Assembly (NCBI RefSeq): GCF_002113885.1
Contig: NW_018405338.1
Location: forward strand, 1,176,968 to 1,240,967
Length of the DNA stretch: 64,000 nucleotides
Origin: Mizuhopecten yessoensis
Taxonomy: Eukaryota
Reading direction: 5' to 3'
The translations under genes and the position numbers were made by a program. Numbering within the stretch: position 1 is the stretch's first letter; every line of letters begins with the position of its first letter. This document shows, one piece after another, positions 1,271 through 28,744 of the stretch. The notes under the pieces were generated by a model. It ran no database searches. It was not told the DNA's origin and saw only the letters and a list, made by a program, of their open reading frames with translations.

Positions 1271-1454
1271 CTAGTGTGTTTCCATGGTTACAGCTGTCTC
1301 CTATACAACAGTATTTACAGTGAACTTCGTTGGCACTCCCAAAGCATTGTGAACTGACAGCTCGAGCTTTTTCGACACAAGTTCGAAAAGATTCACATCC
1401 TTTATTAAGCTCTAGACCACTCGTTGTGAACGTCAAATTAGAATAACACACCGG
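1271..1454 (-). CDS. LRR-Ly6 protein, exon 7 (C-terminal half of Ly6/LU-like domain); the gene probably continues beyond the window start
   Basis: 184-bp phase 0-1 exon, TTTCAG|...|GTAAGC; PVCYSNLTFTTSGLELNKGCESFRTCVEKARAVSSQCFGSANEVHCKYCCIGDSCNHGNTL has the LU hallmarks 'KGC' and terminal 'CCxxDxCN', and is phase-compatible with exon 6. Confidence 0.82.
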
Positions 1455-3907
1455 CTGAAAAGATAAATACATATCATATAAAAAAGGACGCCATGTCTAC
1501 TCCATGTCTGATAGGTTGAACAACGTGCATATTGCCTGTCCATTGGATTCAGTAGGTGTTCTTCACTTCAAACATACGCACAACGTTAATACATACCAAA
1601 GGATCACATAGCAAAACTAGTCCCCTTTTTAATTATTTGATAAGTAGATATTTATAGTACCAGTGGCATTGATGTTTGATGATCTATCATGTTAAGCAAT
1701 AAAAATAAGCACTTGAAACAAAGAGATCAAACAAAAGGAAACTTTTGAACAATAGCGAATGCATCTGAATAATTGACAAGATCGAGAGTTATTTTCCATA
1801 TTTCATTCAGTAATTTCTCCCTTAGGTTACTTAAAAATATGTTTTAAAAGATATAGAATAAAAATGATTAAAAAACCTAAAGTGTGATCGTATTTGATTA
1901 TATGCACTGTTTATTTTTTTTAAACTAAATTTTTAGTAGAATTACAATTTAAAACTTGATTTTTAAGGAATCATGGCAAAATATTTTCTCATTAAAATCA
2001 GCATGATTATTTTCCCCAATATTGGGTTCAGCCTCTCAGCACCTGGAATGACTTGACATACATAAGATTATTAAATTTTCTTTTCCCAGAGATATATCAT
2101 AGCGAATTGAGTTGAAATATGACCACTTTTTTTTAGAAAGAGTAGACCTTTAAGACTTAAATACCAAAAATTTCCCTTGTACCCTAACCCGATCTCAAGG
2201 TAGCGACACCATTCCTTTTACAAAACAAGCTATTAGGAGAGCTTCAATATGTGAATATAGTTATATATATAAGATCGGAATCTAAATCATTTCTATGTTT
2301 TGATCCAAGTACTATGCCCTCAGAGAGAGGGCCTTACTCCTGGATCAATGCTGGTAATCTCCATCCATTAACTGTAGATGTGGTTAGATTGTGTGTATCG
2401 AAGACGTTTTTAACTTTTTTTTGCCCCGCCCCGCAGCCCCGGGGAGTAAAGTCTTCCATTTGTACAATCTTAGATGCATACATTAATGTATTTCTCGTCG
2501 TCAGGTTTCATGGAATTCCTTTCAGCATTTCAGAAAAAAGAAGTCATTTCAAGAATTGTTGATGAAGGGATGTGGAAGGGTAATTAAATAGAGGTCAATG
2601 ATATATTTATAATTGATCTCTGAAAAGAATGTATATTTGCAGAGTAAAACGTCATAATAAAGTTTATGAATAATGTATTGCTATTAACGTTGTAACATGG
2701 AATACAAAGTCAAGGATAGGAAGAAAATCAATAACCATAAATGACCTTTCTAATAAATGGACATAAAAAACAAGGAAGTACGCCACTTGCATCACCTATT
2801 CAAAATAATTAGTAATGCGACACAATTCAACGCGATATTAATAGGCAAGAACTCTTTCATATCAAGCAATTTTGACCTTAAGGTATCATTATAGGTATAA
2901 CCCTTCCAAATTAATCAGGGATGAGAGTTGTGTGTGGTTGTTTGTATTCCTAAAGACCTACTTGTATTTCATTCTAATTGCAGAATTTGATATTATAGAT
3001 ACCAAAGACTTTACTTATGAAACCATTGTTACTTTATATATGTATGAATATAATTGTCTCCTCCCTGCCAGAAAGATGAGCGTAAGACAAACATATTTGA
3101 TACAGAACGCCAAAAATAAATACCTATCATAAAGCACAACATCACATTCATGACTGTTCACCTTTCGTCACTAGTAGTCAGACAGTTGTGGAAAATAGAC
3201 CAACATTATACTTTCCATAAGTTTGCAGAGTATTCTACCGGACAATCTTTGATCTACGTTGACGACATGTCACGATCGGCACGAGTAAAGACTGTTTTAC
3301 AATGTTATAGATCATTCATGACCAACATACTGTCCTGGATGTGACATACGACATAATGACGGATACATGTTTTATGTGAGTTCACAATCTTTATGTTGTT
3401 GTTTGAGTGTCACCCAAGTTCAGTTTATTGTCATTTTATAGATTTTGAGTTAGAATTTCCTCCTTGTATTCCCTTTTGATTCACATAAAAAGAAAAGAAA
3501 ACTATTTTTTTTAAAATCTTTTATTGGTGTATCAACTTTTTCAAAATGATACACGTGAATATAACTCTATCACAACATAATGAACAAATCTCAATACCAC
3601 TTTTTAAAACATTAATACTAAAACAACAAGACTTGTAAGCCACTTTATAAGATATATGCCCAGCTCTTTCCGAGCAAACTTCCGTCGTCAACTTTTATCA
3701 GGTATGTTGATGAAGTGATATGCATGCTGAAGTTCCTGTAATAAATGTTTAACAGTTGTCTTTGATAATATTAAAAGTATCGAAATATATCTCTGAGGGA
3801 ATAATCGCCATGCATTCCTCACTTAGAGCCAATAATTCTTCCATTGAAGACAGTACGTAGTAAAATCGTTCAAGAATTGTCAATATAATAAGTTGTTACA
3901 TTGTGTG

Positions 3908-4065
3908 TATTCCGTCTTTGCGTATTGCAGAGTTATCTTCTCTTGGGATCAGGTATTGATTGTTACGTCACTTGTTTGTGAGAGTAACGTCACCAATTTT
4001 TGAGAAAACGACGTTATTTCTTTTACACAAACCAATGACGTAACAATCAATACGCAAAGACGGAA
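3908..4065. mobile_element. MITE family A copy (right arm internally deleted)
   Basis: TATTCCGTCTTTGCGTATTG...CAATACGCAAAGACGGAA; same family as 23313, 52657 and 56486. Confidence 0.8.
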
Positions 4066-4155
4066 GAGGGAAATCATAGAAAACCTTCAAAGCTGAAACA
4101 AAAGTGTGATAATTAATTTTCAATATAACAGACAAGAATTGTAGAAGTAACCGGA

Positions 4156-4377
4156 TAATATGGTGTCCACCGATGGATCGATGGACGGACCACCTGATGA
4201 CAGTATCCCCCTGGCCTCGTTGTGGGAGGTTTATAATATGGTGTCCACCGATGGATCGATAGACGGACCACCTGATGACAGTATCCCCCTGGCCTCGTTG
4301 TGGGAGGTTTATAATATGGTGTCCACCGATGGAACGATGGACGGACCATCTGATGACAGTATCCCCCTTTATAATAT
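4156..4377. repeat. 78-bp tandem repeat, ~2.8 copies
   Basis: Unit ATAATATGGTGTCCACCGATGGATCGATGGACGGACCACCTGATGACAGTATCCCCCTGGCCTCGTTGTGGGAGGTTT; explains the three overlapping repetitive ORFs. Confidence 0.95.
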
Positions 4378-5683
4378 GCAATTAAAGAATCATATTTGGT
4401 AATACGTCAGCAGAATTTCTAAGTGTGCTCATACAATCGATAAGTGGACGTTACAAAGTAAGCAGCATATTATGATCTTATCCTTGTTATCAATGCAATG
4501 ACTGGGACCAGTCACCTGCCATAAAAAAAAGTTTATCTGCAAAACTAAATTTTGTCAGTGCAAAGTAGCACGAGAGCAGCTATGTATATCCATTAGAATT
4601 TTTTAAAAGGGCACATTGTTTAGCACTTTTAATCAAACATTTTCACAACAGATCTACAACTGAAATATGAATCAGATTTGGAGAAGTGTTTCGGCAAACC
4701 ATATATAAAACTGAAACATCAACAAATTTGTCAGCGAAACCTCCGACAATTTAGCAGGGGAGCCACAAGCGTTGCTAAAATAAACTTCCGCTTATATCTG
4801 GACATCCATGATGTGTTTATTATTTTATCGGTCTCCTACTTTCTTTTTATCGTATTTTCCATTCTATTTTGATTTCTTTCCATATGTGTAAGCACTGCGG
4901 TATATGTAATATTGACACAACATCTTAGCAGAATTAATTTTTAAGCATATGCAAAAGTTTATAATTTGGAAAAAGATTAAAAAGAATGAAAAATATACTA
5001 AAACGTGGACATAAGAGTCATTTCATAATGATTTAATTTGATAAGTTCGTTGTCCTTGTTATCAAATAAAGTCCTATACCTAAATTTAGTGCACTACTGC
5101 ATCCATTTGTCTGATAAGTTGCCAGAGTCATACAGTGACACGCCTGGTTCGTACTACCATAAACAATATTTTTTACTTCAAAGTGATTGTAGTGTAAACA
5201 AAATATCCATTTATACGACTTTGACTTCATGGTACTCAACTATCCGAGACGTGAGCAAGGAAATACCAGTCCGATATCATTATAATATATCATGACGTCA
5301 TCCCTTTCTGTGTTATGTCGTCCTGTCAACATAAATAAACATTTCCCTTGATGAACCTCTAAAAAGGGGACAGTACTAGGGAGATACTAAGGAGCTCATT
5401 TTTATATTTAACCATCGAGAAGAAAAACGATGTATTGAAAATGTGTCGAAATGGCGAAAGTGTACAATAAACTGATCGACAATCGGACAATTCGTCTACT
5501 TAATATGGGAGTGTATGTCAGACTCATACACAGACATAAAGAAACAGACCAACAAAAATTCTGCAGTTTGTGGAATGGTCAATCAGAGTTGGATTGCCTG
5601 CCCTTGTACCATTTCTCTCCGCTAGGTTGCGCTCTTTTGTCAAAACAAAGACCAAACTGTTGAGAAGCGCCTTACGATAAATA

Positions 5684-6513
5684 TTGATGAACGGAGGAAA
5701 CAGCAGGAGGCAATTATAGCATATACCAAACTTGATGTTGGTAGTTATTTAGTATATGTTGACTTATGTCAAACCCTAAGTGAGTCGTCAGAAGAAGAAG
5801 GAAATGAGGAAGAAAAATGCAAAGTCTTCCTGATAAGACTTATTTTTATTTGAATTTCTAATTAATTTTATCCTTTGTTACACAAGCGGCTCCACTTAAG
5901 CCAAACACATATTGACCACGCGTACATCACGTGAACAGTCAACGCTGATTGGTCAACTAAAGGCGGTCACGGTTGAGTGGAGCGCACTTGAACCTCACCT
6001 TCGTCAGTGATCAGCAACAGTGCACAGACTGATTTTTGTAAATATTGACAAAAACGCACCCTCCACCATCCCTTCTGACGCCTTCCTTTCGGTTAATGTT
6101 GTTTATTCAGTTTTATTTAATGCATTTCATTGTAATAATTGGTATATTTTAACCGTTACTACATCATAAAAGATGTACATGTATATCTAAAATAACGTAT
6201 ACGTTAAGATTATACAGAAGGAACAGGTATTTTGATTCATTTGTATTGGCGGTTTTATGGGCCGGAATTTCATCAAAAAATATTATTTAGTAATATGGAC
6301 GATCAATGATAAATTCAACGGCCACCCGTAGGTGAGCCATTTACGGCATTTCGTCGTTTGGAGTTATATTTATAGATTTTGATGAACGGAGGAAACAGCA
6401 GGAGGCAATTATAACACATGCCAAACTTTATGTTTGTAGTTATTCAGTATATGTTGACTTATGTCAAACCCTAAGTGAGTCGTCGTCAGAAGAAGGAAAT
6501 GTGGAAGAAAAAT
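5684..6513. repeat. Pair of ~135-bp direct repeats (5684-5818 and 6379-6513)
   Basis: Both read TTGATGAACGGAGGAAACAGCAGGAGGCAATTATA...CCCTAAGTGAGTCGTC...GGAAGAAAAAT. Confidence 0.9.
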
Positions 6514-7618
6514 ATCACTACAGCATGAACGCATTTATTTTAGGAATGAAACATACTTGCATGTGGTTTACATCGATTGCACGTGTAATTTAAAAAAAAA
6601 ATCTTAACTGCTAATTAGTATATATTTCGCATGCAACTTTTCAGTAAAATTAATAATAAGTTATGATGGTAGGATTTCCTTTTGCAAAAACATGAATCAT
6701 GATTTACAAACAAACTCATCCAATTACAATCGTATTGTATGATTATCCGACGAGCGATTACTAAATAACAATATCATAAATCGTGCTGTCTGAAAGTAAC
6801 ACAATCCATAATGAGACATATAAAAACTAATTAACGATGTATCTGTTAATTTAATGAACACCATTCGCACTGTTTGGTGGTAGTAAGATAGGTTTTTGAC
6901 GATGTGTTTATCATTTTTATGTCAAATAACGTATTATTAAGTATTATTTATGTCAGTGGACAAGCTTAACCTGTATAGTAATGATCTGTTTCCAACGTAT
7001 TAAGACATTGTTGTGTGGATTTGGTATAATGATAAAAAGAGAACAGGAACAAAATGGGCGGATAATCACATAGATATATGGTAGCCTTCTTACCCTCCGC
7101 CTCCCCTCAAACCTGCTTTGCCTGTGCCCTTTGACCCTTTAATCTTGACCGATGACCATACAAATCTAATTAGATATAAAACTCGATATAACCATTATAT
7201 GATGTATATCTGAACTAAGTGTGTTCAGGTGTTGTTTATTAGATATCTTGTACACAAGCTTTTTATTACCGAAGGACGGACTGGTGGACGCACACACGGA
7301 CGGATGCAGTGACAAAGCGATTACTTTATATCCCTCTCGCTACATTCGGGTATAATAAGAATGGAAATGCCTTAAAGTAAAGATACTACTGCATCAGTCA
7401 TTATCTCGAAGAAGGTATGTTTGACTTGTGGTATTCTCCCTACAAATATTAGCGCTTTTTTAGCTTATGACCACATCAATTGTCAATTTATTGCTCCCTC
7501 AGTTTTCAATCCCCGCATAAAATTTTAAACCCATCAATAAACCTCAAAGTGTTTTGCTGATTTTAGTTTTTAATTCATGGAAAACAACAATGTAAAACTG
7601 TAGGGTTGTCAGTATTAA

Positions 7619-8880
7619 AGGGACACCACGTGAAAAGGCGTGTTTTTTTTAATGAATGTATGTATTGTATGCACTTCCACTTATGTTACCACGCTATCCC
7701 CATATTCATAGTCCGTTCCAAATGTCCAGTTTGACCACTTGAATTGTTCGGGAAAGCCCTGCTAAAAATAGCGCCGATAACGTCACCCGACTAGGCAGTA
7801 AACACAAGTGGTGCGAGCGAGATGAAACGGTTTCCAAAGNNNNNNNNNNNNNNNNNNNNNNNNNNNNNNNNNNNNNNNNNNNNNNNNNNNNNNNNNNNNN
7901 NNNNNNNNNNNNNNNNNNNNNNNNNNNNNNNNNNNNNNNNNNNNNNNNNNNNNNNNNNNNNNNNNNNNNNNNNNNNNNNNNNNNNNNNNNNNNNNNNNNN
8001 NNNNNNNNNNNNNNNNNNNNNNNNNNNNNNNNNNNNNNNNNNNNNNNNNNNNNNNNNNNNNNNNNNNNNNNNNNNNNNNNNNNNNNNNNNNNNNNNNNNN
8101 NNNNNNNNNNNNNNNNNNNNNNNNNNNNNNNNNNNNNNNNNNNNNNNNNNNNNNNNNNNNNNNNNNNNNNNNNNNNNNNNNNNNNNNNNNNNNNNNNNNN
8201 NNNNNNNNNNNNNNNNNNNNNNNNNNNNNNNNNNNNNNNNNNNNNNNNNNNNNNNNNNNNNNNNNNNNNNNNNNNNNNNNNNNNNNNNNNNNNNNNNNNN
8301 NNNNNNNNNNNNNNNNNNNNNNNNNNNNNNNNNNNNNNNNNNNNNNNNNNNNNNNNNNNNNNNNNNNNNNNNNNNNNNNNNNNNNNNNNNNNNNNNNNNN
8401 NNNNNNNNNNNNNNNNNNNNNNNNNNNNNNNNNNNNNNNNNNNNNNNNNNNNNNNNNNGGCTATCCGGAAGAATACATGCACCGTACTAACTGCTACGGC
8501 AGTTATTTTCTCCTTTGAATACTGCCCACCTGCAATAATGATTCCGTAACGTACTCCTTGCGCTATCTTTTGACCATTTGGCAACTTTTCGTTTCGTAGC
8601 TGACACGGTACAACACTTTTCTTTCGCTTACTTCACACGGCCAGTCATTTTGTTTACAAAGAAATGGTGTGCTATGCGCATGCGCCAGTAGAGGGAAATC
8701 CCTGAACAAAACGTTGGTCAGACAGGTAGAAATACCGATGATTTTCTTAGATTTAATCATTTTTATGAATCTATTTCAGCCAAATCCGATCGTTATTTTC
8801 CATAAGGAGTCTCACTTGATATGTTTATGTAGTATTTGAAAAAAAGACAAAAAATAAAGTTACTTCACCGTGATGCCCCT
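7619..8880. mobile_element. Non-autonomous DNA transposon with TTAA target duplication (Kolobok-like), spanning the gap
   Basis: Left TTAA|AGGGACACCACGTG, right CACCGTGATGCCCCT|TTAA: imperfect TIRs beginning AGGG, flanked by TTAA. Confidence 0.6.
7840..8458. other. Assembly gap (619 N)
   Basis: Run of n characters. Confidence 1.
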
Positions 8881-9728
8881 TTAAGATCACGATGTCGATT
8901 CTTGCATTTATTTATTTTCTCTCCGTTTTTCAAATATGCATCATTCTTAAACTATATATATGTAAAATGTTTTCAACTTGGTTTTTATATTGAATTCTTT
9001 CGTTAAAAAATAAGTAAACTAAAAGTTTAATCCGGGTGACAATGGTATAAATAGACTTGATGGTACTCTTTACTTAAATACAACTGGAGTAAAATAGACA
9101 AAACATTTACCTTAGTTCAAATACGTCGGGAGAAATGTGAGCCTTAATTAAAATCAATACGAGCAGGCATTAATAGAACCAAATTAACAACAAAACCAGA
9201 TATTATGAAACCCTACAGAGAAAGGAGAGGCTAGATTTTTGGAACTGGTCAACAGTTCATTTAACTCAGTGCACCAACCATAACGCCTCTTTTATAATCC
9301 CTGTCGATGTCATATCTACCTGACACATGTTTATTAGCTAGCAACACCCTACGACACATTGAACTTATCTATTATTATAAGCTGTCACACACTCATAACA
9401 ACATTTTCATTTGTTTGATTATGATCACGATGAGGACGGTGTTTGTGATATTGACTCGGTCTTAATATATTTTTTAGAAATAGTAGGTTAATATTCATTT
9501 TATGACGTCATTTCAATGGTAGCGACACAATGCTTTCTGCAAAATGCAGTATTTTTTTCCTGAAATTTCACACGTTTTATCATTGTTAAGGATTTAAACA
9601 TTGTTAAGCGTCAAATATAACAACTAAGGACTTTTATTTCGGCGAATTTTCGATGAAAAAAGTCTTTCTCAGGTTCATATAACCACATTATCACCTCAAC
9701 AAAAATCATTCATTGATAAACAGAGGAT

Positions 9729-9866
9729 ATTTAATGGTGTCGTCATTAATAACAAATATATTTCACGAGTGTGGCTAATATTTTGATATTTTTTACTCGT
9801 GTAAAATATCAAAATATTAGACACACTCGTGAAATATATTTGTTATTACTAAAGACACCATTAAAT
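9729..9866. mobile_element. Fold-back (palindromic) MITE-like element
   Basis: ATTTAATGGTGTC...TTTCACGAGTGTGGCTAATATTTTGATATTTT / AAAATATCAAAATATTAGACACACTCGTGAAA...GACACCATTAAAT. Confidence 0.75.
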
Positions 9867-10736
9867 TTTCTATTTATTACATTTTTAAAGCATAAACATA
9901 AACAAAAATGTAATGCATTAAAAAAGGGCAGGAATCAGGAGCGTAATAATTAGCACCATATCCTAATGACGTCACACTTGACAACAAGGCTGCAAGCCAT
10001 TTTGAATGGGATACTCAACGCAATTCCGACGTTTTCTGCTATTTTCTGGTATAATTGCTTATAAAAAATGTTATTAATTGTATATTAATGTAAATACTTA
10101 TGTGTGTGTACCAAACATTTACCATAACAGCCACTTATTCTGCTATCGCTTCATTTGAATCTGAACAAAAAACGTTGCCTTTGAATGCAGCGAATAGAAG
10201 ATGCCGTTATGATTGGTCAATATCAAAAATATCACTTTTGATATTTGTCACAGTGTGAAAGATATCAGTTTTATCAAGTTGATAAAATCCAATATTTCAC
10301 TGGCAAAAATGTAATAAATGTTTTATCCAACCTGTTTCTTTAAATGACGCCAAAATTGAAGTCAGACATTGCTGCTTTCAAAATAAAATACATTCAGTTT
10401 ATGTTATTATGTTGAATACTTTTGAGAAATTGGTAATCAATTAGTTTACATTCATAAATCTCTACCGTTTTGAAACACGTTTTCTACCTCTAAGACATAC
10501 CAGCATTTTAAAAATATTTGCCTTAGTTTGAAAGGCAGTCCTATAAATTATAAATACAAAATCGTAAAACATGTGTTGGATAAATTGTGCTGAATTTGAA
10601 CAAGGACAGTGCTATATCATTGAAAAAGTGGGTCTGTAAAAGGATCATGGTCATTTCACGACATTCCTGAAAGTTCCATGAATCGATCTGGTAGTTTTTG
10701 ACAGGATATCGTTGAAAAGAAATTACTACACAAAAT

Positions 10737-12110
10737 TCACGCCTGCTCTATCTTTAAACGGCATTTGTCCCAATGCTCCCGACATTCTTCACGAAAGTTC
10801 TTGTTAATAATTGTATAAATTACAGGATTTGCAGCATTGTTAAGATAAAACAGATGCATGAAAAATGTTTCCATCGCCTTTCCGGTCTCTGACTGGCCGG
10901 CCATATACGACGGCGCGAATAACCAGCAAAACCTGATTACCCAGAATGGAAGCCAGGAGAGCAGGAACACCGCCGTCACTAAAAACAGGATTTTCGCCGC
11001 CTTTAACCTGGCCTTGTTACACTGTATACTCTCGTCCTTCCATTTCAACTTATCCTTTCGGGTCATTCTCGCAATTGCGTAGTTTTTCCTTCTTTGATGA
11101 TTTACTGAGCTGACCTTGTTGTCTTTCTGAACATATTTATTACAGTTTTTCAATATTGGCTGGTGTATCTTCTCTGTATCCAAATCCTTATATACACTCG
11201 CTGTGAACATGCTGGCGGTTAACGAAACATTCTCGATTGTTGACACAGAACAAATATCCGAAGATCTCGACAAGACCAGTGAGGGACTACCTATACCATC
11301 CTTACTTGTACTGCCTTGGTCTAACGAGGTTAGGAACGATCTTTTGTTTGCATATTTTTCGTTCTTTTTCGATGAATCAGTGACCAAGTCTTTGGGAGAA
11401 ACAAGTCGTAAGCGGCGTCGATAGGCTGTACGGGCAACACTGAAATACAGTATCATCATTCCTAAAACAATGACGCTAAAGTTTACAAACATAACCATTC
11501 CAAATGAAGCCATCGACAGTGACCCTTGATAAAGATCACTGAAGTCGCATACATATCCTTTGATAGTTCCTTGAACCGGAGTTGGTACTTCTATCATCCT
11601 CTTTCCGTAAAACTCAAGCAACGGTAGACTGACAACTATGCCTATTGCAAACGTTGCGATCAAAATACTCGTGGAATGTTTCTGATATTTTAGGAACTGA
11701 AATGGTCTGCAAATGGCAAGATACCTGTCCACGGCTACCACAAGTAAAACGATGGCGGATACGGACAATATGGAATGAATCAAAAACTCGAACAATTTGC
11801 ATGTCAATACCTGTTGTTGGTTATAGCTGTTAAATAACTTGGATATAACGTAGGGATGAATAGCCACGCAGGAAGTTAGATCTATACAGGCCAGAGTGAT
11901 TACGAAGCAGTTGGCAGTGGTTCGAACCTTACGAACGCTGTATATCCAGATCACAATCAGGTTACCGGGGATACCTATTATCATCAGAAGACACATAAAC
12001 GATAGCAAGGGAACACTCCGTATAACCATTTCATCATTTAGCTGGTCGATTGTCTTTTTCCAGCAAATAAAATCGCATGAAGCAAAGGAGGAATTGTTGC
12101 TAGTATTCAT
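10737..12110 (-). CDS. Rhodopsin-like (class A) GPCR, peptide-receptor type (CCK/gastrin-receptor-like orphan), intronless CDS, 457 aa
   Basis: Seven hydrophobic segments; TM1 GIPGN, TM2 LACID, TM3 Cys (CKLF) and VDRY-LAICRP, ECL2 Cys (YVCDF), long Ser-rich ICL3, TM6 FLLSWLPF, TM7 NNAANPVIY; N-terminal N-glycosylation sequons NTS/NNS/NSS. Confidence 0.96.
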   Translation of the reverse strand: MNTSNNSSFASCDFICWKKTIDQLNDEMVIRSVPLLSFMCLLMIIGIPGNLIVIWIYSVRKVRTTANCFVITLACIDLTSCVAIHPYVISKLFNSYNQQQVLTCKLFEFLIHSILSVSAIVLLVVAVDRYLAICRPFQFLKYQKHSTSILIATFAIGIVVSLPLLEFYGKRMIEVPTPVQGTIKGYVCDFSDLYQGSLSMASFGMVMFVNFSVIVLGMMILYFSVARTAYRRRLRLVSPKDLVTDSSKKNEKYANKRSFLTSLDQGSTSKDGIGSPSLVLSRSSDICSVSTIENVSLTASMFTASVYKDLDTEKIHQPILKNCNKYVQKDNKVSSVNHQRRKNYAIARMTRKDKLKWKDESIQCNKARLKAAKILFLVTAVFLLSWLPFWVIRFCWLFAPSYMAGQSETGKAMETFFMHLFYLNNAANPVIYTIINKNFREECREHWDKCRLKIEQA

Positions 12111-12423
12111 TATGATAAATACAATTTTTCACGAACATCTGAAATGAAAAGAAAGTTTTTTTATAATTGTATGTGATAAACTCAAAACCCATCATTTTTT
12201 TTACAATTATCCGTTTTCTGATGGACGTTTCAATATCCTTATTTTATTTTATTTTTAATGAGATTTTTCAATTAATATTTCATTTTTTGTTTACTGTAAA
12301 AAATTTATTCAGTTTTTTGTTTGCTACGGTATTAAAGCATTCAAAGTAGTTAAGGTAATAAAAACATACTAAAACACTGAAATATCATAACCGCCAGATC
12401 ACATAAGACTAAAACAGACTTAC

Positions 12424-12640
12424 CGGAGAATATCAATGAAAAACATTTAAGCTGTATTACTAGCAATATCGCAGATACGTATAGAACTAACGTTCGGTTA
12501 TGTCAGAATACCATCAAACGGTTGAAGATGATGTAACAGAAATGAATAATGTTATTCCTGAAGTATTTTGCCGAATAAAGTCATAATAAATCACAATGTG
12601 CGCAGGATGTTTTTGGCTTCCTATGAGGATCAATGGACAT
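12424..12640 (-). other. Probable 5'UTR exon of the GPCR
   Basis: Bounded by acceptor ATTTTGTAG| and donor CCG|GTAAGT. A further donor TTG|GTAAGT lies at 12939/12938, and a strong acceptor CTTTCTTTTCATTTCAG| at 12139/12138 sits 28 nt before the GPCR ATG. Confidence 0.55.
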
Positions 12641-15600
12641 CTACAAAATGAATTACTTTTCTACGAGTATGACTTTTGTTCATAAAATATCAACACTGTC
12701 TTAATTACAAAGGTTTTTTCTAACCTTTCACATCATTATCATTCCACGAAAAAAAGAGAGTAAATGCCTTTATCTGGATAACTGATAATTCCATGTAGTT
12801 TTGCGTTGAGGTTTCTCAATATTTCAGGACACTAGTATCTCATCTTAGTGAGCAGATGATGTATCTTCTATGCATCATAACAAAACACTTTTCCTAGAAA
12901 ATATCTATTGACATTAGAACGTATGAATTCCAACTTACCAACGTTTAGATGTCCAAATAACGGTAATGTATTTCCTTGTACACCTTTCAATTAATCAAAA
13001 TCAATCACCGACTCCAACTTCCGAAGAGCCACAGGATATAAGTGCGTGCGGCATGGCAATCATCACGGTAGGTATGTCATCGCTTGGAGCGTTCGCGGCG
13101 TTTTCAATATAGCCTTAGTAGTAACGAGCGATCGATAACGGGCGATTCCTCTATCAATAGAGAACCAATCGCGTTCCCTTACTATCAGTCATATTGCGTA
13201 TACATCGTGTATTTGCTAAACCACTGGGAATTGTCTCTGATCGTATCGTCAACTGATGTTGATATTAAACGCTATTGTTCATACTGACTACAAATCACTG
13301 AAAATGTAATACCTCTTGAGAGAGATACTATGATACTCATAACGAGAGATCTGAAAGCTGATTCTTATCTGCATCTGAATGGACATAAGCTGATTCAATT
13401 GTATGCATATTGTACTATTGAAAACAGTTGTTCGGCTTCCTGTATCGAGTGGTATAGGTGCAATCATTTGTTAATGTCTTCTGTACATCTTTTTTAGATA
13501 TTGGTTGGTGGAGTATGTCGGCAGGTTTTTAGCCCCAACAGTTTTATAAATTGCCACAGTAATATCCTTTAAGAAGTGGAACGAATCTGCATACACACTC
13601 TTTACTCATTATCAATTTCATATTTACCAATGCTCCTATCAACGCTTTGAATTGCATTTAGTTAAGAGGGCTTCCTTTTCCCATTTGTATTTTGAATGCA
13701 GTTTAGACAAATACGGGTTTCCAAGATTGTTTTTGTTTAACTCCTTGCATTACAGATGAGTCTTAGCAGTACAAAACAGTTTAATGGTGAAGTGTACTTC
13801 AAATTGTGCATGCTGTTTCACTATCACCTAATTTTATGTGTTTCAAGTGTCTTACGTTTGACATTTCATATTTGTGTTTCAATTTGTATTGTATTTCTAC
13901 TGATTATTTCATTTAGAAAGTCGGTAAACTCTGCTTATGGATCATCAATGCCTGAGGTTGGCCGTAAACTTCAAGTTGGAAATTTATTCCTACTTGGTTT
14001 ACATTAATATACTAGCTTACAATATACCATACTAATGGAAAAAAGTAACGAAACTTTAATTGTGGCTTTACACTTCCCCTATTTGTCAGTATGATTGATC
14101 CTCCGGGTGACAGAGAGGTATCGCCACAAATTGGTGTATGTCTACAAAGCATAACCTTGCTGTACGTTTTTATCAAATAAAGACAAAATTCAGGCATCTT
14201 GCACCTGTTATAAACTTGAAAACCATTCAAACACGAACTCCTGATCTGCACAGATACAATGCACAACGAGTTAGTACAAAAACCAGTAATAACCAGAATA
14301 CGGCGGACGTCTGTGGTTGTGAGAGGAATTGCACTTATTTTGCAGTTTGGTGTTCATGCATCAACCATTGCCCATTTAGTTAGACGTCGAAGACACTCTG
14401 GACGTTAACAACCCGACCCAGAAGAAGACGTCCATGCATAATGTCTGGACGTCAAGACAGAGCGCGAGAATGTCTCATACCCGGAATCGTTTTCGGGACT
14501 TACAGCACTAAATCAGCCAATCAGCAAGTGTTACATACGATTGTAATCCCTACCTTTTTTCCCCCGATTAAACACAGTGCCTCTGGATAAGTTAAATGGG
14601 TAATTGTTGACATATTTTTCATTGAATGAATTCTATAGATATTTAACTTTAAATAAACGTATAGTTTTAGTAGATTTTAATAAATGATGGCGGATTGATA
14701 TGGGGTCAAAAGTAAGGGGGTGTTCCCGGTCCACTTCAACGGTTTGGCTTGTAAACGTCTGGTTGTCAAAAGCAGACACCTGTAGCACTCTTATATGCCA
14801 CTAACCTCGCCAAAAACGTCTTTTGGAGCCTTTTTCTGGTATGGATCTATAGATATAGACAGTTGTCACTAGTGCTGAACTTCAAATATAAAAGCTATTA
14901 GCTCAAAAGCATAGTAATAACACATAGTAAATGAGGTAAACGGCGAACAATTGGTAATTGATATTCATGGACGCCGAGTGTGCCCGAGAAGTCGGTTGAA
15001 CCGCTCTTTACAAATGCTCGAATAAGGGTAAAATTTTCAACCTTAATTTTGCATCGATATTAGAAATATTTTATTCAATATAGTTCTAGGTCGTTAAATA
15101 CTGATAATTAATCCTTGGAAATGCTTTAATTAGTTTTTTATCAGTCACAACGGCCCAAAAAAATCACAAAGTTTTTTCGAAATTGAATCAATGTTACCTT
15201 ACTAATTTCAGCTTATTTTAGCGAACTGAAAATATACATTACTAGAATTAAAACAGAGCAACGCTTTGATAATCTGTGAACCAACAATATCTGTAGTAAA
15301 AAAATATACAAAAAAATAAACGAGCACAATGATATGAAGCGCAATATTATGAAGCGAAAAGCGCTTCAAGAAGTTACCGCTTAATAATGTATGTTAATAG
15401 TTTACTTTTAGTCTGAAATTCATTGTTTTGTTATTTATATGTGCATATACACAATTAAAATTAGATATTTCTTTAATGTTATTTTTATTTATTGATTTAT
15501 TTAATATCATTTTTTATTTTTATTTAATATCTACGTGCTTCACCAAACATTACGTGACAAAATAACGCAGTTCACCACAGCATGGGACATAATGTGACAT

Positions 15601-16822
15601 TAAAAACATGTCATAAACAGAACGAAAGGATGTTAATTTATTCGTTTGTGTGAAAGTTCTTTTACAATTAGCAATATATGAACTCAAATAGATTCAAATG
15701 AATAATAGTGTCAATCATGCTAATTGATGCTAGTTCGTCAAAAGTGAAACATTTCAAATGAAAAATAATATTACATTCAAGATAGACGCATGGTTAATGC
15801 AAAGGTGGTTTTTTTTTAAAGAATGACTAAGGGCCAATTAAAACATTCGCGATCACCACTTTTATCTTGTGTATCACGTATTATTTCATATGATTAATCT
15901 TATTTAAAATTGTATTTTCTTCGTGTAATTTATAAACAATATTCATTTATGACCATAACAGGTTTTGTTGGTGGGAATACCGGAGAAAATCACCGACCTG
16001 AGGCCAGTACCTAGCGACTGCCTCGAACGAACAACCCAGGGGTATAGGGCTATCAATCGTATATACTACAGACTTTACAATATTCGACTCCTTGATAACG
16101 TCACATTCCGGATACTCGGCAAACTAAACCCTGTGCAAAAATGTCACGTTTCGTAGTAACAACAGCCTACCTGTCACGTTTCGTAGTAACAACAGCATAC
16201 CTGTTGTGAAGCAAATGTTTATAACAAACTTATTATTCTCTTAACAAGCATTTGTCGCAAGTCTATTATCATCATTACTTGTACGGTATTTCATTGTCAA
16301 TGAATTAAATCTCAAATCCTGTCCACAACTAACTAAAAAGAGAATTTATCGCACAATCACTCAAAGTCTAGTTTTAGTCAAGAAACATGTACAACGTTCA
16401 TTTTGTACTAAATGCACTTCTCTTCAAAGAGTAAAGTACGACACACACAAGTGGAAGAGCCTATAGAATTTTATGATTGATACTGTATCCTAAATATTAA
16501 TCATACTGCACTATACAGCGGTTCGTTCTTCAAGAAGCATTGGTAAACATCAAACAAATTAATTACATTTAACATATTTAAGTAAAATTCCTTATATACC
16601 AGTTGATTTTTGGAACAAGGTTTAAAACATATATTTGCGAAACCTAGTTTTACTGCCAACATTTTTTATTTGAAACTATATAGGGGTTTGGAAATTAGGA
16701 AGGGAGATGTTCGTTTAAACGGACATTCTTGAAAGACGGTTGCAGGGAGCTAGGTGCCAAATGAAAAGGGAGAATTATATCGGGGTTTATTGGATGTAAA
16801 TTAAATTGAACATGGTACTTAC

Positions 16823-16932
16823 TTTATCTTCAGTTAAACACTGTACTGTAGTTGTTGTTTCGTCACATTCCCTATCACTCTTTTTCCGGGAACAACCTTC
16901 ACAATCAATACCCTGATTGAAAAGATCCTGTC
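16823..16932 (-). CDS. LRR-Ly6 protein, exon 6 (N-terminal half of Ly6/LU-like domain)
   Basis: 110-bp phase 1-0 exon, TTGTAG|...|GTAAGT; (G)QDLFNQGIDCEGCSRKKSDRECDETTTTVQCLTEDK contains the CxxC start of an LU fold. Confidence 0.85.
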
Positions 16933-17282
16933 CTACAATATGATAGATAAATAAAGTAAACATTAATATTGAGATGTTGTCGGGAAATTCGAATATTATG
17001 AAAAGCCCTACTCTCTAAAAGAGCTTCACGCTAAACTATTTAAAAGTTTGTTGTGAGATGACTTACTAGATACAGCTAACAGAAATAGCTAACGCTTATG
17101 CTGACAATCACATCCTAGGGAAATAACCATTGCTACTTATAGAAAATATATTGAAATATTTTTAGTACTTAATGAACTATCTAAGAGAAACAACTGTTAA
17201 TAAGTCATAAGTGCAGTGCATAGTGTTAAATAAAAATTGATCAATTTTAATGAGAAGTATAAGAACTGTTTAATATTCCTAC

Positions 17283-17449
17283 CAGTGCATCCACCAAAGT
17301 CAGATACGTCCTGAATTGGAAGATTGTTTTTGTTCGCACAATACGCGTCCAGCACGCTGACGCCAAATGCTGTTGACATGAAGTCGTACCATTGTTTGAA
17401 CTTCCTCATCTCGCAATCACAAATAAGACCGGTGTTTCCGGTAAAAGCA
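17283..17449 (-). CDS. LRR-Ly6 protein, exon 5 (LRR C-terminal cap)
   Basis: 167-bp phase 2-1 exon, ATACAG|...|GTAGGA; (L)AFTGNTGLICDCEMRKFKQWY...DAYCANKNNLPIQDVSDFGGCT matches the LRRCT pattern 'GN..L.CDC....F..W...C...C'. Confidence 0.88.
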
Positions 17450-18551
17450 CTGTATGGAAAGATAACAAAAATGTTTAAGTAAGAATATACTTTGTAAGAT
17501 GTATACCATCAGCTTTAAATATTCATGCTTGCAATGCCTGTGAGGACATGCTTTTTGTTGTTTAGGTCTTTCATTTAACAGTGAGTATGAATCTGAATAA
17601 ATTCAGACTGTGCACATTGTATGAAAATAATTCACTAAAAATTTGATAAAGGGTAACAATGAAATTCATATATCAGAAAAGGTTCACAAAGAAATGTATT
17701 ATGATTTATATTATTTGTTTAAATTGTATGAATAGTAAAACACTTGCATCTGGTTGATTTTGGTCAGGGTAACGAAAGAATCGCCAACTACTCTTGAAAT
17801 CTGGTTATTTGAAAGGTCCCTGAAAGTATAAAGAATCGGCACTAGTATATTTAAACATGACCATACAATTATGAGGCAGGACAACGAGAGGTTTTAAGTA
17901 AATATCATTATAAAACCTCTTTAAAAACTTTGTTAAAATAAGACTTGAAGATAAGGCGAAAAGGTCAGTCAACTGTAGCCATCTTTGATTTTGGGTTGGC
18001 AAAAAAATTAATCAAATTGCCCATGGGAGGATCCTTCGTGCTTCTTTTCGTTAAAAATATACCCAATGATCTAGAGAAGTTGAAACATTTTGGTCAATAA
18101 GAGCACAATGCGAAGAAATAATGATATCTACTCAGTGTCGTCAGAGGAACGTTTATAACCAGCCAGGTTAAAATTAGCCCTGTGGAATTTCAGACGTACT
18201 AAATGACACACCAATCTTGAATTTCGAATCTGCCCGAAATAATACTATGTCAAGCCAATGGAAGAAAACAATATACAACGCTCAGCAAAAACCAATCAGA
18301 TAGAAATTAAGATCTCGAAAGTCACAACAAATCAGAAGTTGTAAAGGAATTTTTAATCGAACTGAATAAAACAAAAAAGTGTAAAAAAACGCGATATTTA
18401 GTATAGAAATAATGTCGTACATTTTGGATAGTTACATTAAAAGTTGGATTTAACTCAGTGTGACTCCTACGCAAGTAGTTCATACGTAGTTGGGGTATGA
18501 ATGCATTTCGATTCGATGGTTGCGAGTACTAATCTATGGGTATCATACAAT

Positions 18552-18712
18552 TGGTTTGGTTTGGTTTGTTTGTGTTTTACGTCCTATTAACAGCTATGGT
18601 CATTAAAGGACGTGCCAGGTTTTGATGGTGGAGGAAAGCCGGAGTTCCCGGAATAAAACCACCGACCAACGGCCAGTACCTGGCGACTGCCCCACGTAGG
18701 TCTCGATCTCGA
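18552..18712 (-). mobile_element. SINE fragment (V-type core plus (AAACC)n tail)
   Basis: GGTTTGGTTT tail, TTTACGTCCTATTAACAGC, GGAGGAAAGCCGGAGTTCCCGGAATAAAACC; a related fragment lies at ~15962-16030. Confidence 0.7.
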
Positions 18713-18934: not shown

Positions 18935-19006
18935 AGTGTTGCAAGGTTAGACAAATATCGGAACATTGTAGATTCAATCCTTGTTAATAAGTTGTTCTGC
19001 AAGTTC
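18935..19006 (-). CDS. LRR-Ly6 protein, exon 4 (one 24-aa LRR)
   Basis: 72-bp phase 2-2 exon, TTACAG|...|GTAAGT; reads (L)NLQNNLLTRIESTMFRYLSNLAT(L). Confidence 0.9.
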
Positions 19007-20103: not shown

Positions 20104-20175
20104 AGGGTCCTGAGGCTGTATAGCTGATCAAAGCTTCCACCAGCTATATTCTTGATCCTGTTATCGTTGATATGT
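20104..20175 (-). CDS. LRR-Ly6 protein, exon 3 (one 24-aa LRR)
   Basis: 72-bp phase 2-2 exon, TTTCAG|...|GTATGT; reads (L)HINDNRIKNIAGGSFDQLYSLRT(L), a typical LxLxxNxIxxIxxxxFxxLxxL repeat. Confidence 0.9.
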
Positions 20176-20480
20176 CTGAAATAGCATACATTGTAATTAC
20201 ATTTAACTAATAAAAAGACATTTTAACTGCTAAAATAGTTCTAAAGCAAATTAAATTAAAAAGATCCCTGTTCTTAGGGATATTGCTGGGGTCACTGAAT
20301 ATCGCATCCCTTGGTAATGAAACTGTTATCAAATGACGTCGATTTACTTGATACCTTTCTTTACAAACAAAGTGTAATTGAAATTGGATATTTACCAATC
20401 GATATCAAGGATATACCTTAGGGTAAACAAGCTCCTCATCAATTTATTTAAGTAAAATAAATAAATAAATAAAATACATA

Positions 20481-20634
20481 CAGGATCTTATATCAGTTTC
20501 CATTTCATATGAGAGATATGAAATCAGTTTAAATACTTTCAATTTATCGGGCCCCTGGCGAGCTAAAATGAAAAAAAAAACTCGTGACGAGTTTCATAAA
20601 TATCATAGGAAATGAAAACCAGTGTAAGATCCTG
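20481..20634. mobile_element. Degenerate inverted-repeat element
   Basis: CAGGATCTTATATCAGTTTCCATTTC ... GAAATGAAAACCAGTGTAAGATCCTG. Confidence 0.6.
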
Positions 20635-21269: not shown

Positions 21270-21341
21270 AACGTTTCTAGTAAATGTAGATTAAGGAAGT
21301 TTCCTGAATTAATCCATGTTATCATATTGTTTTTCAACATC
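21270..21341 (-). CDS. LRR-Ly6 protein, exon 2 (one 24-aa LRR)
   Basis: 72-bp phase 2-2 exon, TTTCAG|...|GTAAGT; reads (L)MLKNNMITWINSGNFLNLHLLET(L). Confidence 0.88.
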
Positions 21342-21622: not shown

Positions 21623-22380
21623 AGTGACAGATCGAGATAAGAGCAGACAGATACAGAGGCAGAGAGACACACATACAGAGAGCAACAGACATACTGACAG
21701 ATACAGAGGCAGAGAGAGACACATACACAAAACAAGAGACCAACAGGCAGATACAGAAGCAGAGAGAGACACATACAGAGGACAAGACACTAACAGACAG
21801 ATACAGAGGCAGAGAGAGTCATATACAGAGGCCAAGACACTAACAGACAGATACAGAGGCAGATAGAGTCATATACACAGGGCAATAGACCAACAGACAG
21901 ATACAGAGGCAGAGAGAGACACATATAGAGGGCAAGACACTAACAGACAGATACATAGGCAGGGGAGTCATATACAGAGGGCAAGACACTAACAGACAGA
22001 TACAGAGACAGAGAGAGTCATATACAGAGGGCAAGAGACCAACAGACAGAAACAGACGCAGAGAGATATAAACAGAGGGCAAGACACTAACCGACAGATA
22101 CAGAGACAGAGAGAGTCATATACAGAGGGCAAGAGACCAACAGACAGAAACAGAGGCAGAGAGCGTCATATACAGAGGGCAAGACACTAACAGACAGATA
22201 CAGAGGCAGAAAGAGACACATATAAACGGCAAGGGACAGACAGACAGATACAGAGGCAGAAAGAGACACATACAAAGGGCAAGAGACAGACAGACAGATA
22301 CAGAGGCAGATAGAGACAATAAACAAAGGGCAGGAGACAGACAGACAGACAGATACAGAGGGGAACGAGACAGACAGAAA
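21623..22380. repeat. Purine-rich ~50-bp minisatellite built from ACAG/AGAG motifs
   Basis: Unit ~ACAGACAGATACAGAGGCAGAGAGAGTCATATACAGAGGGCAAGACACTA, in intron 1 of the LRR gene. Confidence 0.95.
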
Positions 22381-28493: not shown

Positions 28494-28744
28494 AACACCT
28501 TGGAGTCACGAGGAATGCCCGCAGGTACTTCAATGAACCCTTTGGAAGAACAGTTGACCAGGAGTCTATCATTGCTGAGAATCGAACATGGGCACGTGAT
28601 GGTATTTCCAGGACTGCATAAGTTGTTATCCAGAAAGTTAGTCGTTGTAGACGAGTTGACTGGTAACAATACGACACACACCATGACTAATCCAACGGTC
28701 CAACTGGTCCTTAAAACGGCACATACTTTACTTCGTGTCGACAT
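28494..28744 (-). CDS. LRR-Ly6 protein, coding exon 1: signal peptide + LRR N-terminal cap
   Basis: ATG at 28744. MSTRSKVCAVLRTSWTVGLVMVCVVLLPVNSS (hydrophobic leader), then CSPGNTITCPC...LLVNCSSKGFIEVPAGIPRDSKV (LRRNT-like C-C-C-C, 'VP.GIP'). Ends phase 2 at donor TT|GTAAGT. Confidence 0.88.

What the first reader, a model, noticed from the sequence alone, without database searches (positions are those of the whole stretch)
1455..16822. Peptide-type GPCR nested on the SAME strand inside the intron that splits the Ly6 domain
Seen: the two halves of the LU domain (16823-16932 and 1271-1454) are ~15.4 kb apart, whereas neighbouring introns are 0.35-1.5 kb. The whole GPCR unit (putative UTR exons near 12939 and 12424-12640, CDS 10737-12110) lies between them in the same orientation. 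Established: nested genes are more often antisense to the host; same-strand nesting forces the host transcript to skip the guest's splice sites and polyA signal. Inference: host and guest may be mutually exclusive or co-regulated. Splicing of host exon 6 into a GPCR exon would truncate the host to a secreted LRR-only form. Speculatively, the LRR-LU protein could be an accessory subunit or modulator of the receptor it encloses.
Basis: partly seen in the sequence, partly recalled or inferred. Interest (0 to 1): 0.8.

Follow-up and report, generated by a model that had tools for sequence, protein, structure and literature searches.

The report
Receptor gene nested inside receptor gene
In the Yesso scallop a small single-exon rhodopsin-type receptor gene sits, in the same orientation, inside a 15 kb intron of a large adhesion-type receptor gene; four scallop genera share the arrangement, but it is an ordinary kind of gene nesting with no sign so far that the two genes work together.

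Summary
Minus-strand exons 16932-16823 and 1454-1271 are two halves of a Ly6/uPAR-like (LU) domain. They are separated by a 15,368-nt intron whose only long ORF and only conserved DNA is an intact 457-aa class A GPCR (12110-10737) on the same strand.

Spliced contigs from two public runs join 16823 directly to 1454. Annotated orthologues in Pecten maximus and Ylistrum balloti splice across the same nested GPCR, and Argopecten irradians has the same exon order. The N gap (7840-8458) therefore lies in an intron and is not a mis-join of two genes.

Three parts of the interpretation need correcting:
- The host is not a small LRR-LU protein. It is the 5' part of a ~1170-1200-aa adhesion GPCR (LRR-LU-GAIN/GPS-7tm_2, nearest ADGRG6) that runs off the window.
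- "Peptide-type" is not established for the guest. It is an orphan.
- The proposed 5'-UTR exons and any host-to-guest splicing found no RNA support.

The guest is under purifying selection (dN/dS about 0.12-0.15), but its transcription was not shown. Octopus homologues have the same LU-splitting intron at 1.7-1.9 kb with no guest.

Verdict: a new member of a known kind, of modest interest.

The parts
28494..28744 (-). Host exon 1 (coding part): ATG at 28744, signal peptide, LRRNT and first LRR. Ends in phase 2 with donor GTAAGT.
   Evidence: tblastn with P0057 gives 57% identity over residues 2-84 and with P0053 62%.
21270..21341 (-). Host exon 2: a 72-nt LRR exon, phase 2-2.
20104..20175 (-). 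Host exon 3: a 72-nt LRR exon.
18935..19006 (-). Host exon 4: a 72-nt LRR exon.
17748..17819 (-). Host exon 5: a 72-nt LRR exon. Its donor reads GCAAGT here, whereas the three orthologues have GT.
17283..17449 (-). Host exon 6: LRRCT, 167 nt, ends in phase 1.
   Evidence: The junction to exon 7 is shown by the loose end at 16933, which equals window 17284-17313.
16823..16932 (-). Host exon 7: first half of the LU (three-finger) domain, holding Cys 1-4. Ends in phase 0 with donor GTAAGT.
   Evidence: Spliced contigs in X1 and X2. P0052 residues 43-78.
1455..16822 (-). Host intron 7: 15,368 nt including the estimated gap. It holds the guest gene, and nothing else in it is conserved at the DNA level with the orthologous introns.
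10737..12110 (-). Guest gene: single-exon CDS of a 457-aa orphan class A GPCR. DRY and NPxxY motifs are present and the third intracellular loop is about 150 aa.
   Evidence: dN/dS is 0.12-0.15 against three scallop orthologues.
7840..8458 (.). Assembly gap (N) inside host intron 7, downstream of the guest. It was not filled.
1271..1454 (-). Host exon 8: second half of the LU domain, holding Cys 5-12 and ending CCIGDSCN. Ends in phase 1. The next host exon lies beyond the window start.
   Evidence: The loose end at 16823 equals window 1425-1454.

Best explanation
The window comes from Mizuhopecten yessoensis and holds the first eight coding exons of an adhesion GPCR gene on the minus strand. 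The encoded parts are a signal peptide, LRRNT, leucine-rich repeats, LRRCT and one Ly6/uPAR-type three-finger domain. The mucin-like stalk, GAIN/GPS and 7tm_2 parts lie off the window.

The LU domain is encoded by the usual two-exon set flanked by phase-1 introns. In scallops the intron inside that set has grown to 9-17 kb and contains a complete single-exon orphan rhodopsin-type GPCR gene in the same orientation.

Shown:
- The host pre-mRNA is spliced from 16823 to 1454, straight across the guest.
- The guest ORF is intact and under purifying selection in four scallop genera.
- The arrangement predates the divergence of those genera.
- Octopus homologues have the same intron, short and empty.

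Inferred:
- The guest is an independent transcription unit with its own promoter and polyA site inside the intron, as is typical of same-strand single-exon nested genes.
- The arrangement persists because a guest inside an intron is hard to lose or move, not because the two receptors are functionally coupled.
- Any interaction would be generic transcriptional interference.
For: Species and host model: P0052 (OWF51986.1, M. yessoensis) is 100% identical to exon 1454-1272 and joins LRRCT-LUa-LUb.

Splicing: loose ends of X1 and X2 contigs at 16823 and 16933 map uniquely to 1425-1454 and 17284-17313.

Host identity:
- The Pecten and Ylistrum loci carry a same-strand gene of 1192 / 1168 aa around the GPCR, with LRR, GPS and 7tm_2. 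The Argopecten locus carries a same-strand 1199-aa gene with the same exon order, with no Pfam hits on record.
- P0053 hits Pfam 7tm_2 at 1.3e-50, GPS at 5e-14 and LRR_8 at 9e-21.
- The nearest solved receptor is ADGRG6 at 2.5e-87.
- Exon-by-exon tblastn places LUa upstream and LUb downstream of the GPCR in all three species.

Guest:
- Pfam 7tm_1 at 5.4e-35.
- 62-69% identical full-length orthologues in three scallops.
- dN/dS 0.12-0.15 with dS of 1.3 or more.
- The CDS is the only part of the intron alignable between species and its only ORF of 100 aa or more apart from ORFs that run through the N gap.

LU identity:
- A profile of five sequences hits LYPD6 (E 0.002 and 0.0029) and LYPD1 (0.011) over the whole domain, with all Cys aligned.
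- Nearly all of the top 50 Foldseek hits are three-finger proteins.
- The phase-1 flanks match the archetypal LU exon set (PMC6600238).

Octopus: the same LUa|LUb split, introns of 1.7-1.9 kb, and no GPCR inside.

General pattern: same-strand guests are mostly single-exon (PMC3814207), and guests sit in long 5' introns (PMC11694760).
Against: - Transcription of the guest is not demonstrated in this species. In X1 and X2 its k-mer depth (about 6) is like that of other patches of the intron (4-6), so it could be host pre-mRNA or DNA carry-over. The two raw-read RNA runs had no read on it.
- No promoter, transcription start or polyA site was located.
- The proposed UTR exons are unsupported.
- The rest of the host (GAIN/GPS/7TM) is off the window and is inferred from orthologues only. 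The one M. yessoensis protein model recovered is a 285-aa fragment.
- X1 and X2 come from one study and are labelled RNA only by a guess, though spliced contigs show that RNA is in them.
- Neutral persistence versus functional coupling was not tested by expression data.
Confidence: 0.8

Rival explanations
1. The nesting is functional. Transcription of the host adhesion GPCR and of the guest class A GPCR interfere with each other. This could give promoter occlusion, or premature polyadenylation of the host at the guest's 3' end, which would yield a secreted LRR plus half-LU form. The two receptors would then be mutually exclusive or co-regulated, and selection would keep the arrangement.
For: - The arrangement is conserved on the same strand and in the same intron in four genera whose synonymous sites are saturated.
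- Host/nested interplay through premature polyadenylation is documented at some mammalian loci (PMC11694760).
- One polyA run had host-exon reads but no guest reads.
Against: - Conservation of a nested position needs no selection, because rearranging a gene out of an intron is rare.
- In Drosophila, nested and host genes show no more correlated expression or function than neighbouring genes (PMC3814207 abstract).
- No truncated host isoform, no joint and no pile of ends was seen in 10951-16950.
- The intron already holds 27 sense AATAAA hexamers.
- No conserved non-coding block lies around the guest.
Confidence: 0.12
2. The GPCR ORF is not a separate gene but an alternative terminal exon of the host, so that chimeric host-GPCR transcripts or proteins are made.
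For: - The two are on the same strand.
- Consensus acceptor-like sites lie upstream of the ATG, near 12140 and 12640.
Against: - Exon 7 ends in phase 0. After the acceptor near 12140 that frame stops after 12 codons and is out of frame with the GPCR ATG.
- The only loose end at the exon-7 donor leads to 1454.
- NCBI models in three species call the GPCR as a gene of its own.
- The GPCR starts with its own Met and an N-glycosylated N-terminus, like its non-nested paralogues.
Confidence: 0.03
3. The picture is an assembly artefact. The N gap would join two loci, so that exon 1454-1271 belongs to a paralogue and the GPCR is not really inside the host intron.
For: - A 619-N gap of unknown true length lies between the GPCR and exon 8.
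Against: - Spliced contigs join 16823 to 1454.
- Three other assemblies, two of them with 51-75 Mb sequences, show the same order and strand.
- The exhaustive search found no second copy of the LUb exon in this species.
- No other LU-like exon appears in 1-30000 by tblastn.
Confidence: 0.02
4. The guest is a decaying or silent relic that is no longer used in M. yessoensis.
For: - No read on it in two RNA runs.
- Its exact protein is absent from a collection of about 15 billion proteins, and no M. yessoensis protein turned up in the homology search.
Against: - The 457-codon ORF is intact and all class A hallmark motifs are kept.
- dN/dS is 0.13-0.15 against Pecten and Ylistrum, and conservation is concentrated in the TM helices.
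- Low, tissue-restricted expression is normal for orphan GPCRs. This last point rests on my own knowledge.
Confidence: 0.03

Closest known systems
Same-strand, single-exon nested genes in long introns (host/nested gene pairs as catalogued in Drosophila, PMC3814207, and in mouse and human, PMC11694760)
   Same: The guest CDS lies wholly inside one host intron. The guest is a single coding exon, as are 72.5% of same-strand Drosophila guests. It sits in an unusually long intron in the 5' part of the host. The host splices cleanly across it.
   Different: Here both partners are seven-transmembrane receptors of different classes. The pair is conserved across four scallop genera. Expression interplay has not been measured.
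Adhesion GPCRs of the ADGRG group (ADGRG6/GPR126, ADGRG2)
   Same: In the orthologue P0053 the GAIN/GPS and 7tm_2 regions match ADGRG6 at 2.5e-87 and ADGRG2 at 2e-80. GPS and 7tm_2 both pass Pfam cut-offs.
   Different: The N-terminus is LRRNT-LRR-LRRCT plus one LU domain and an unassigned region. As I recall, vertebrate ADGRG6 has CUB-PTX-SEA-HormR instead. In this window only the LRR and LU exons are present.
LU-domain-bearing GPCRs of molluscs, arthropods and starfish (Acta Naturae 2026, PMC13719153)
   Same: A three-finger LU domain sits in the extracellular N-terminal region of a 7TM receptor. That paper's domain legend also includes LRR and GPS.
   Different: The paper names no scallop and says nothing about gene structure or a nested gene. 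I could not see its figure, so identity of the architecture is not verified.
LYPD6 / LYPD6B / LYPD1 (Lynx2) LU domains
   Same: The 12-Cys pattern aligns Cys for Cys over the whole domain, at E 0.002-0.011. These are also the best Foldseek matches. The two-exon set has phase-1 flanks, as in archetypal LU genes.
   Different: No Pfam LU model reaches E 0.1. The domain is embedded in a large receptor rather than being a small GPI-anchored or secreted protein. The AlphaFold model has low confidence (pLDDT 54).
Class A orphan GPCRs of lophotrochozoans, variously named 'GPR84-like', 'No18' or '5-HT1D-like'
   Same: A full-profile 7tm_1 match, DRY and NPxxY motifs, the TM3-ECL2 cysteines, a long ICL3, a short C-tail and an intronless CDS, as in its paralogues.
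   Different: No ligand class can be assigned. By counting back from DRY, position 3.32 is Ile rather than the Asp of amine receptors. Similarity to solved peptide and amine receptors is equal.

Membership tests
Rhodopsin-family (class A) GPCR (guest) | Seven-TM domain matching Pfam 7tm_1 above the gathering score | tested here: met
   121.6 bits against a cut-off of 30.5, E 5.4e-35, residues 49-432 covering profile positions 1-260 of 260.
Rhodopsin-family (class A) GPCR (guest) | Hallmark motifs: N in TM1, D in TM2, DRY at the end of TM3, NPxxY in TM7, and the TM3-ECL2 cysteine pair | tested here: met
   Read directly from the translation: GNLIV, LACIDL, VDRYLAI, NPVIYTI, and C at 3.25 plus C in 'GYVCDF'. 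TM6 has SWLP instead of CWxP.
   CCK-B 4e-19, ghrelin 1.5e-18 and orexin-1 1e-17 against 5-HT2B 3e-17 and adenosine A1 1.6e-16. The names given to the orthologues disagree.
Biogenic-amine receptors | Asp at position 3.32 in TM3 | tested here: not met
   Counting back from D3.49 of DRY in the translation gives Ile at 3.32. The numbering is by offset and was not checked on a structure.
Ly6/uPAR (LU, three-finger) domain (host exons 7 and 8) | Cysteine framework with N-terminal CxxC and C-terminal CCxxxxCN | tested here: met
   The Cys pattern is shared by the three scallop sequences and the full-length octopus domains. It includes 'CEGC' and 'CCIGDSCN'.
Ly6/uPAR (LU, three-finger) domain (host exons 7 and 8) | Significant sequence match to known LU domains | tested here: inconclusive
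   The profile against PDB gives LYPD6 at 0.002 and 0.0029 and LYPD1 at 0.011, full length with Cys aligned. No Pfam LU family reaches E 0.1 on P0052 or P0053, or E 1 on the single exons. Atlas leads all fall in the three-finger clan but score below 0.9.
Ly6/uPAR (LU, three-finger) domain (host exons 7 and 8) | Three-finger fold | tested here: inconclusive
   The AlphaFold2 models have pLDDT 40 and 53.6. Even so, nearly all of the top 50 Foldseek PDB hits are three-finger proteins. The best is LYPD6B at E 4e-3 with TM about 0.5.
Ly6/uPAR (LU, three-finger) domain (host exons 7 and 8) | Two-exon set flanked by phase-1 introns (PMC6600238) | tested here: met
   Exon 7 is entered in phase 1 and exon 8 is left in phase 1. 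The same split is found in the octopus homologues.
Adhesion GPCR (host) | GAIN/GPS autoproteolysis motif followed by a secretin-like 7tm_2 domain | not testable with these tools
   These exons lie outside the window. The feature is met in the orthologues: P0053 hits GPS at 5e-14 and 7tm_2 at 1.3e-50, and the Pecten locus gene has GPS and 7tm_2. Spliced contigs extend at least 255 nt beyond exon 7, which is past exon 8.
Host/nested gene pair | Guest lies wholly within one host intron, and the host is spliced across it | tested here: met
   The guest CDS 10737-12110 lies inside intron 1455-16822. The 16823|1454 junction is seen in X1 and X2 contigs. The guest's UTR limits are unknown.
Host/nested gene pair | Guest is transcribed as its own unit | tested here: inconclusive
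   Contigs cover the CDS at the same depth as the intron. There were no reads on it in two raw RNA runs, and no starts or ends were reported.

The most novel reading that the evidence does not exclude
The class A orphan receptor and the LRR-LU adhesion receptor form a conserved regulatory unit in scallops. Guest transcription would switch the host to a truncated, secreted LRR form, or host read-through would silence the guest, so that cells express one receptor or the other. Selection on this switch would have kept the pair together since before the scallop genera diverged.
Probability: 0.08. Interest if true: 0.55.

Novelty: new member of a known kind. Interest (0 to 1): 0.3.

Why it matters
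For annotation:
- The Yesso scallop guest GPCR appears to be missing from public protein sets.
- The one host model recovered here for that species is a 285-aa fragment.
- Both can be corrected from this window together with its orthologues.

For biology:
- This is a clean, datable example of same-strand nesting. The intron is old, because octopus shares it. The guest and the intron's expansion are seen in scallops and not in the octopus homologues.
- Scallop tissue or single-cell data could use it to ask whether same-strand nesting constrains expression.

It does not by itself open a new question. Nested single-exon genes are common, LU-bearing GPCRs in molluscs have been reported, and nothing links the two receptors functionally.

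Tried and rejected
- Pfam on the two LU half-exons separately: no hit at E 1 or better.
- NCBIfam on the GPCR: nothing, as expected for a prokaryote-oriented library.
- AlphaFold2 of the LU domain with a 5-sequence alignment gave pLDDT 40 and was unusable. With 8 sequences it gave 53.6 and was used only as a weak lead.
- The word search with the LU plus following region of P0053 found only Ylistrum and Pecten. With the LU profile it found only small octopus proteins. The reach of the LRR-LU architecture outside scallops therefore stays open.
- DNA alignment of the four orthologous introns, looking for conserved UTR exons or regulatory blocks, found only the CDS. There was also one 36-nt match at the E-value cut-off of 0.001, which I take as chance. 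An isolated 30-codon tblastx patch at 12999-12910 against Pecten is too weak to call an exon.
- Rfam on 1-30000: no family.
- Region 310-540 of P0053 against PDB: nothing. I guessed SEA/HormR from reading this segment, but that stays unassigned.
- The loci of the GPCR paralogues P0006 and P0015 hold no host-like exons, so nesting is not a family habit.
- The look-up of encoding contigs for P0052: not on record.
Exons were searched singly, and the database proteins P0052, P0053 and P0057 were used for whole-domain tests.
- I did not fill the N gap or look it up.
- Read laying could cover only 6000 nt, so the acceptor side (1454) was identified from the loose-end sequence rather than from a joint row.
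Full report
**What is in the sequence.**

The minus strand of 10737-12110 is an uninterrupted 457-codon ORF. It matches Pfam 7tm_1 end to end (E 5.4e-35).

On the same strand, exon 16932-16823 reads ..QDLFNQGIDCEGCSRKKSDRECDETTTTVQCLTEDK. It is entered in phase 1 and left in phase 0 at a GTAAGT donor. Exon 1454-1271 begins PVCYSN.. after a TTTTCAG acceptor and ends ..CKYCCIGDSCNHGNTL in phase 1.

Upstream on the same strand lie:
- an ATG exon with signal peptide and LRRNT (28744-28494);
- four 72-nt phase-2 LRR exons (21341-21270, 20175-20104, 19006-18935, 17819-17748);
- an LRRCT exon (17449-17283).

Intron lengths are 7152, 1094, 1097, 1115, 298, 350 and then 15,368 nt. The long intron is therefore real.

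**The gap.**

N runs from 7840 to 8458, downstream of the GPCR and upstream of exon 8. It is therefore intronic, and reading frame across it is not an issue. Its flanks are unique in the window and unlike each other.

Whether it hides a mis-join was tested in three ways:
1. Logan contigs of two public runs (X1 and X2, one study) end their match at 16823 and continue for 255 letters. The 30-letter consensus of that continuation is identical to window 1425-1454. At 16933 they continue into 17284-17313. Each 30-mer occurs once in the window. So exons 6, 7 and 8 lie in one spliced RNA.
2. A GenBank model of the same species, P0052 (OWF51986.1, Mizuhopecten yessoensis), is 100% identical to exon 8 and joins LRRCT-LUa-LUb.
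3. Three other scallop assemblies show the same order and strand (see the synteny section below).

Its true length is unknown.

**What the host really is.**

Looking up the three best GPCR homologues in their genomes showed each one lying inside a larger same-strand gene:
- Pecten maximus: 1192 aa, with LRR, GPS and 7tm_2.
- Argopecten irradians: 1199 aa, with no Pfam hits on record.
- Ylistrum balloti: 1168 aa, with LRR, GPS and 7tm_2.

The exhaustive protein search with exon 8 returned the Ylistrum protein P0053 ("adhesion G-protein coupled receptor G6-like"). It matched at residues 252-310, directly after the LRRCT and the first LU half. Pfam on P0053 gives LRR_8, GPS (5e-14) and 7tm_2 (1.3e-50). 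Its GAIN-7TM part is closest to solved ADGRG6 (2.5e-87) and ADGRG2.

The window therefore holds only the 5' part of an adhesion GPCR gene. The next exon (P0052 residues 141-177) is not in the window.

**Synteny.**

Exon-by-exon tblastn places the elements as follows.

| Species | LUa | GPCR | LUb | Intron |
|---|---|---|---|---|
| Pecten | 3039-3152 | 10001-11386 | 20443-20634 | 17.3 kb |
| Ylistrum | 6380-6493 | 10001-11377 | 18437-18628 | 11.9 kb |
| Argopecten | 7349-7465 | 10001-11368 | 16694-16885 | 9.2 kb |

For Pecten and Ylistrum these are the annotated proteins' own exons, at 95-100% identity. Counting the window, four genera share the nested arrangement.

Between species, the only alignable DNA in the intron is the GPCR CDS, at 67-74% nucleotide identity. 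Pairwise dN/dS for the GPCR is 0.12-0.15 with dS of 1.3 or more. Identity is concentrated in the TM helices and low in the roughly 150-aa third loop. The guest is thus a selected gene, and the arrangement is old.

**Is the split domain an LU domain?**

- Pfam does not call it.
- A five-sequence profile hits LYPD6, LYPD6 and LYPD1 as the three best PDB sequences (E 0.002-0.011). The match covers the whole domain with every Cys aligned, followed by TGF-beta receptor I ectodomains.
- Language-model neighbours are all in the three-finger clan, but score below the level that counts.
- AlphaFold2 gave only pLDDT 40 and 54. Even so, nearly all of the top 50 Foldseek hits of the better model are three-finger proteins.
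- The exon set is flanked by phase-1 introns, as described for archetypal LU genes (PMC6600238).

I accept the LU assignment with moderate confidence.

An intron inside an LU domain is the rule, not an oddity. Octopus homologues (P0058, P0059) have the split at the very same place (..AAE|EPVC..), with introns of 1.7-1.9 kb and no GPCR inside. So the intron is ancient. Its expansion and the guest are seen in scallops and not in these octopus genes, whose orthology to the host is uncertain.

GPCRs with an N-terminal LU domain were recently reported in molluscs, arthropods and starfish (PMC13719153). That paper names no scallop.

**What the guest is.**

It has the class A hallmarks: N in TM1, LAxxD, DRY, NPxxY and the TM3-ECL2 cysteines (read). 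It lacks the amine-receptor Asp at 3.32 (Ile, by offset from DRY).

Solved peptide receptors (CCK-B, ghrelin, orexin) and 5-HT2B or adenosine receptors score within two orders of magnitude of each other. NCBI's names for the orthologues disagree. "Peptide-type" is therefore unproven, and I call it an orphan.

Its paralogues at 34-39% identity are also single-exon, and those I looked up are not nested in a host-like gene.

The exact M. yessoensis protein is not in a collection of about 15 billion sequences. No same-species hit appeared in the homology search. It seems to be unannotated there.

**RNA evidence and its limits (stretch 10951-16950).**

- No joint was reported anywhere in the stretch.
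- The only loose ends at the exon 7 borders lead to exons 6 and 8.
These exons have good consensus sites but no support.
- Depth over the GPCR CDS (about 6) equals that of scattered intron patches (4-6) and is about half that of exon 7 in X1. It may therefore be host pre-mRNA or DNA carry-over.
- Two raw-read RNA runs, each sampled at about 12-13 million reads, gave no read on the GPCR. One of them gave a few reads on exon 7.
- Guest transcription, its start and its end are therefore not shown in this species. Contigs and two unknown tissues cannot show absence.

**Mechanism.**

Shown: the host spliceosome pairs the 16823 donor with the 1454 acceptor across 15.4 kb that contain the guest.

Inferred: the guest has its own promoter and polyA site. 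The first sense AATAAA after its stop codon is at 9878, one of 27 such hexamers in the intron. It also behaves like other same-strand guests, which are mostly single-exon, arguably because introns in a same-strand guest invite mis-splicing (PMC3814207).

A splice from exon 7 into the acceptor near 12140 would stop after 12 codons and would not fuse with the GPCR. None was seen.

Conservation of the position needs no functional link. In flies, nested pairs are no better correlated in expression or function than neighbours. In mammals, more than a tenth of genes are in such pairs, with little strand bias.

I give the plain reading about 0.8, regulated interference about 0.12, and the artefact, chimera and relic readings a few percent each.

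**Verdict.**

This is a new member of a known kind, of modest interest.

The joined spliced model from the window was deliberately not searched, and database proteins stood in for it.

Noticed in passing
window 17742-17747 (minus strand; donor of host intron 5): The donor after LRR exon 17819-17748 reads GCAAGT. The Pecten, Argopecten and Ylistrum orthologues have GT at that position. It may be a genuine GC-AG intron, a polymorphism or a base error. The reading frame requires this junction. The older model P0052 starts only downstream of it.
   Followed up: partly
window 10737-12110 (-): The exact 457-aa GPCR is absent from the ~15-billion-protein collection, and no M. yessoensis hit appeared in the homology search. 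The gene seems to be unannotated in this species, although NCBI calls it in three other scallops.
   Followed up: partly
P0052 (OWF51986.1), encoded from window 17409 downwards and continuing off the window: The M. yessoensis protein model recovered here for the host is a 285-aa fragment. It starts inside the LRRCT exon, and its tail diverges from the orthologues after '..WSLDHPS'. It looks like read-through into an intron.
   Followed up: partly
window 14507-14555: A piece of about 49 nt is covered hundreds of times in contigs and by dozens of raw RNA reads. All of them run on into unlike sequence on both sides. It is a fragment of an abundant repeat or transcript from elsewhere. It has no Rfam match.
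   Followed up: no
window 21644-22360 (host intron 1): A purine-rich (A/G) tandem array with a 50-nt period and 14 copies, with a higher-order period of 347 nt. It translates on the minus strand into long Cys/Leu/Ser-rich pseudo-ORFs.
   Followed up: no
window 4155-4368 (host intron 7): A 78-nt tandem repeat of 2.7 copies at 97% identity. It gives rise to a spurious 137-aa ORF.
   Followed up: no
L006 5835-8170 and L007 9953-26371 (Octopus): Small 'uncharacterized' octopus proteins carry the same LU type, the same exon split and a similar following segment (GWTNSFVF..). They may be fragments of a larger, mis-annotated receptor gene like the scallop host.
   Followed up: partly
window 12102-12140 (-): If the acceptor near 12140 is used, a 12-codon upstream ORF (ATGTTCGTG...TAG) overlaps the GPCR start codon. 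This is hypothetical, since that exon border has no RNA support.
   Followed up: no
window 55197 and 55812: Two single N letters lie outside the finding.
   Followed up: no
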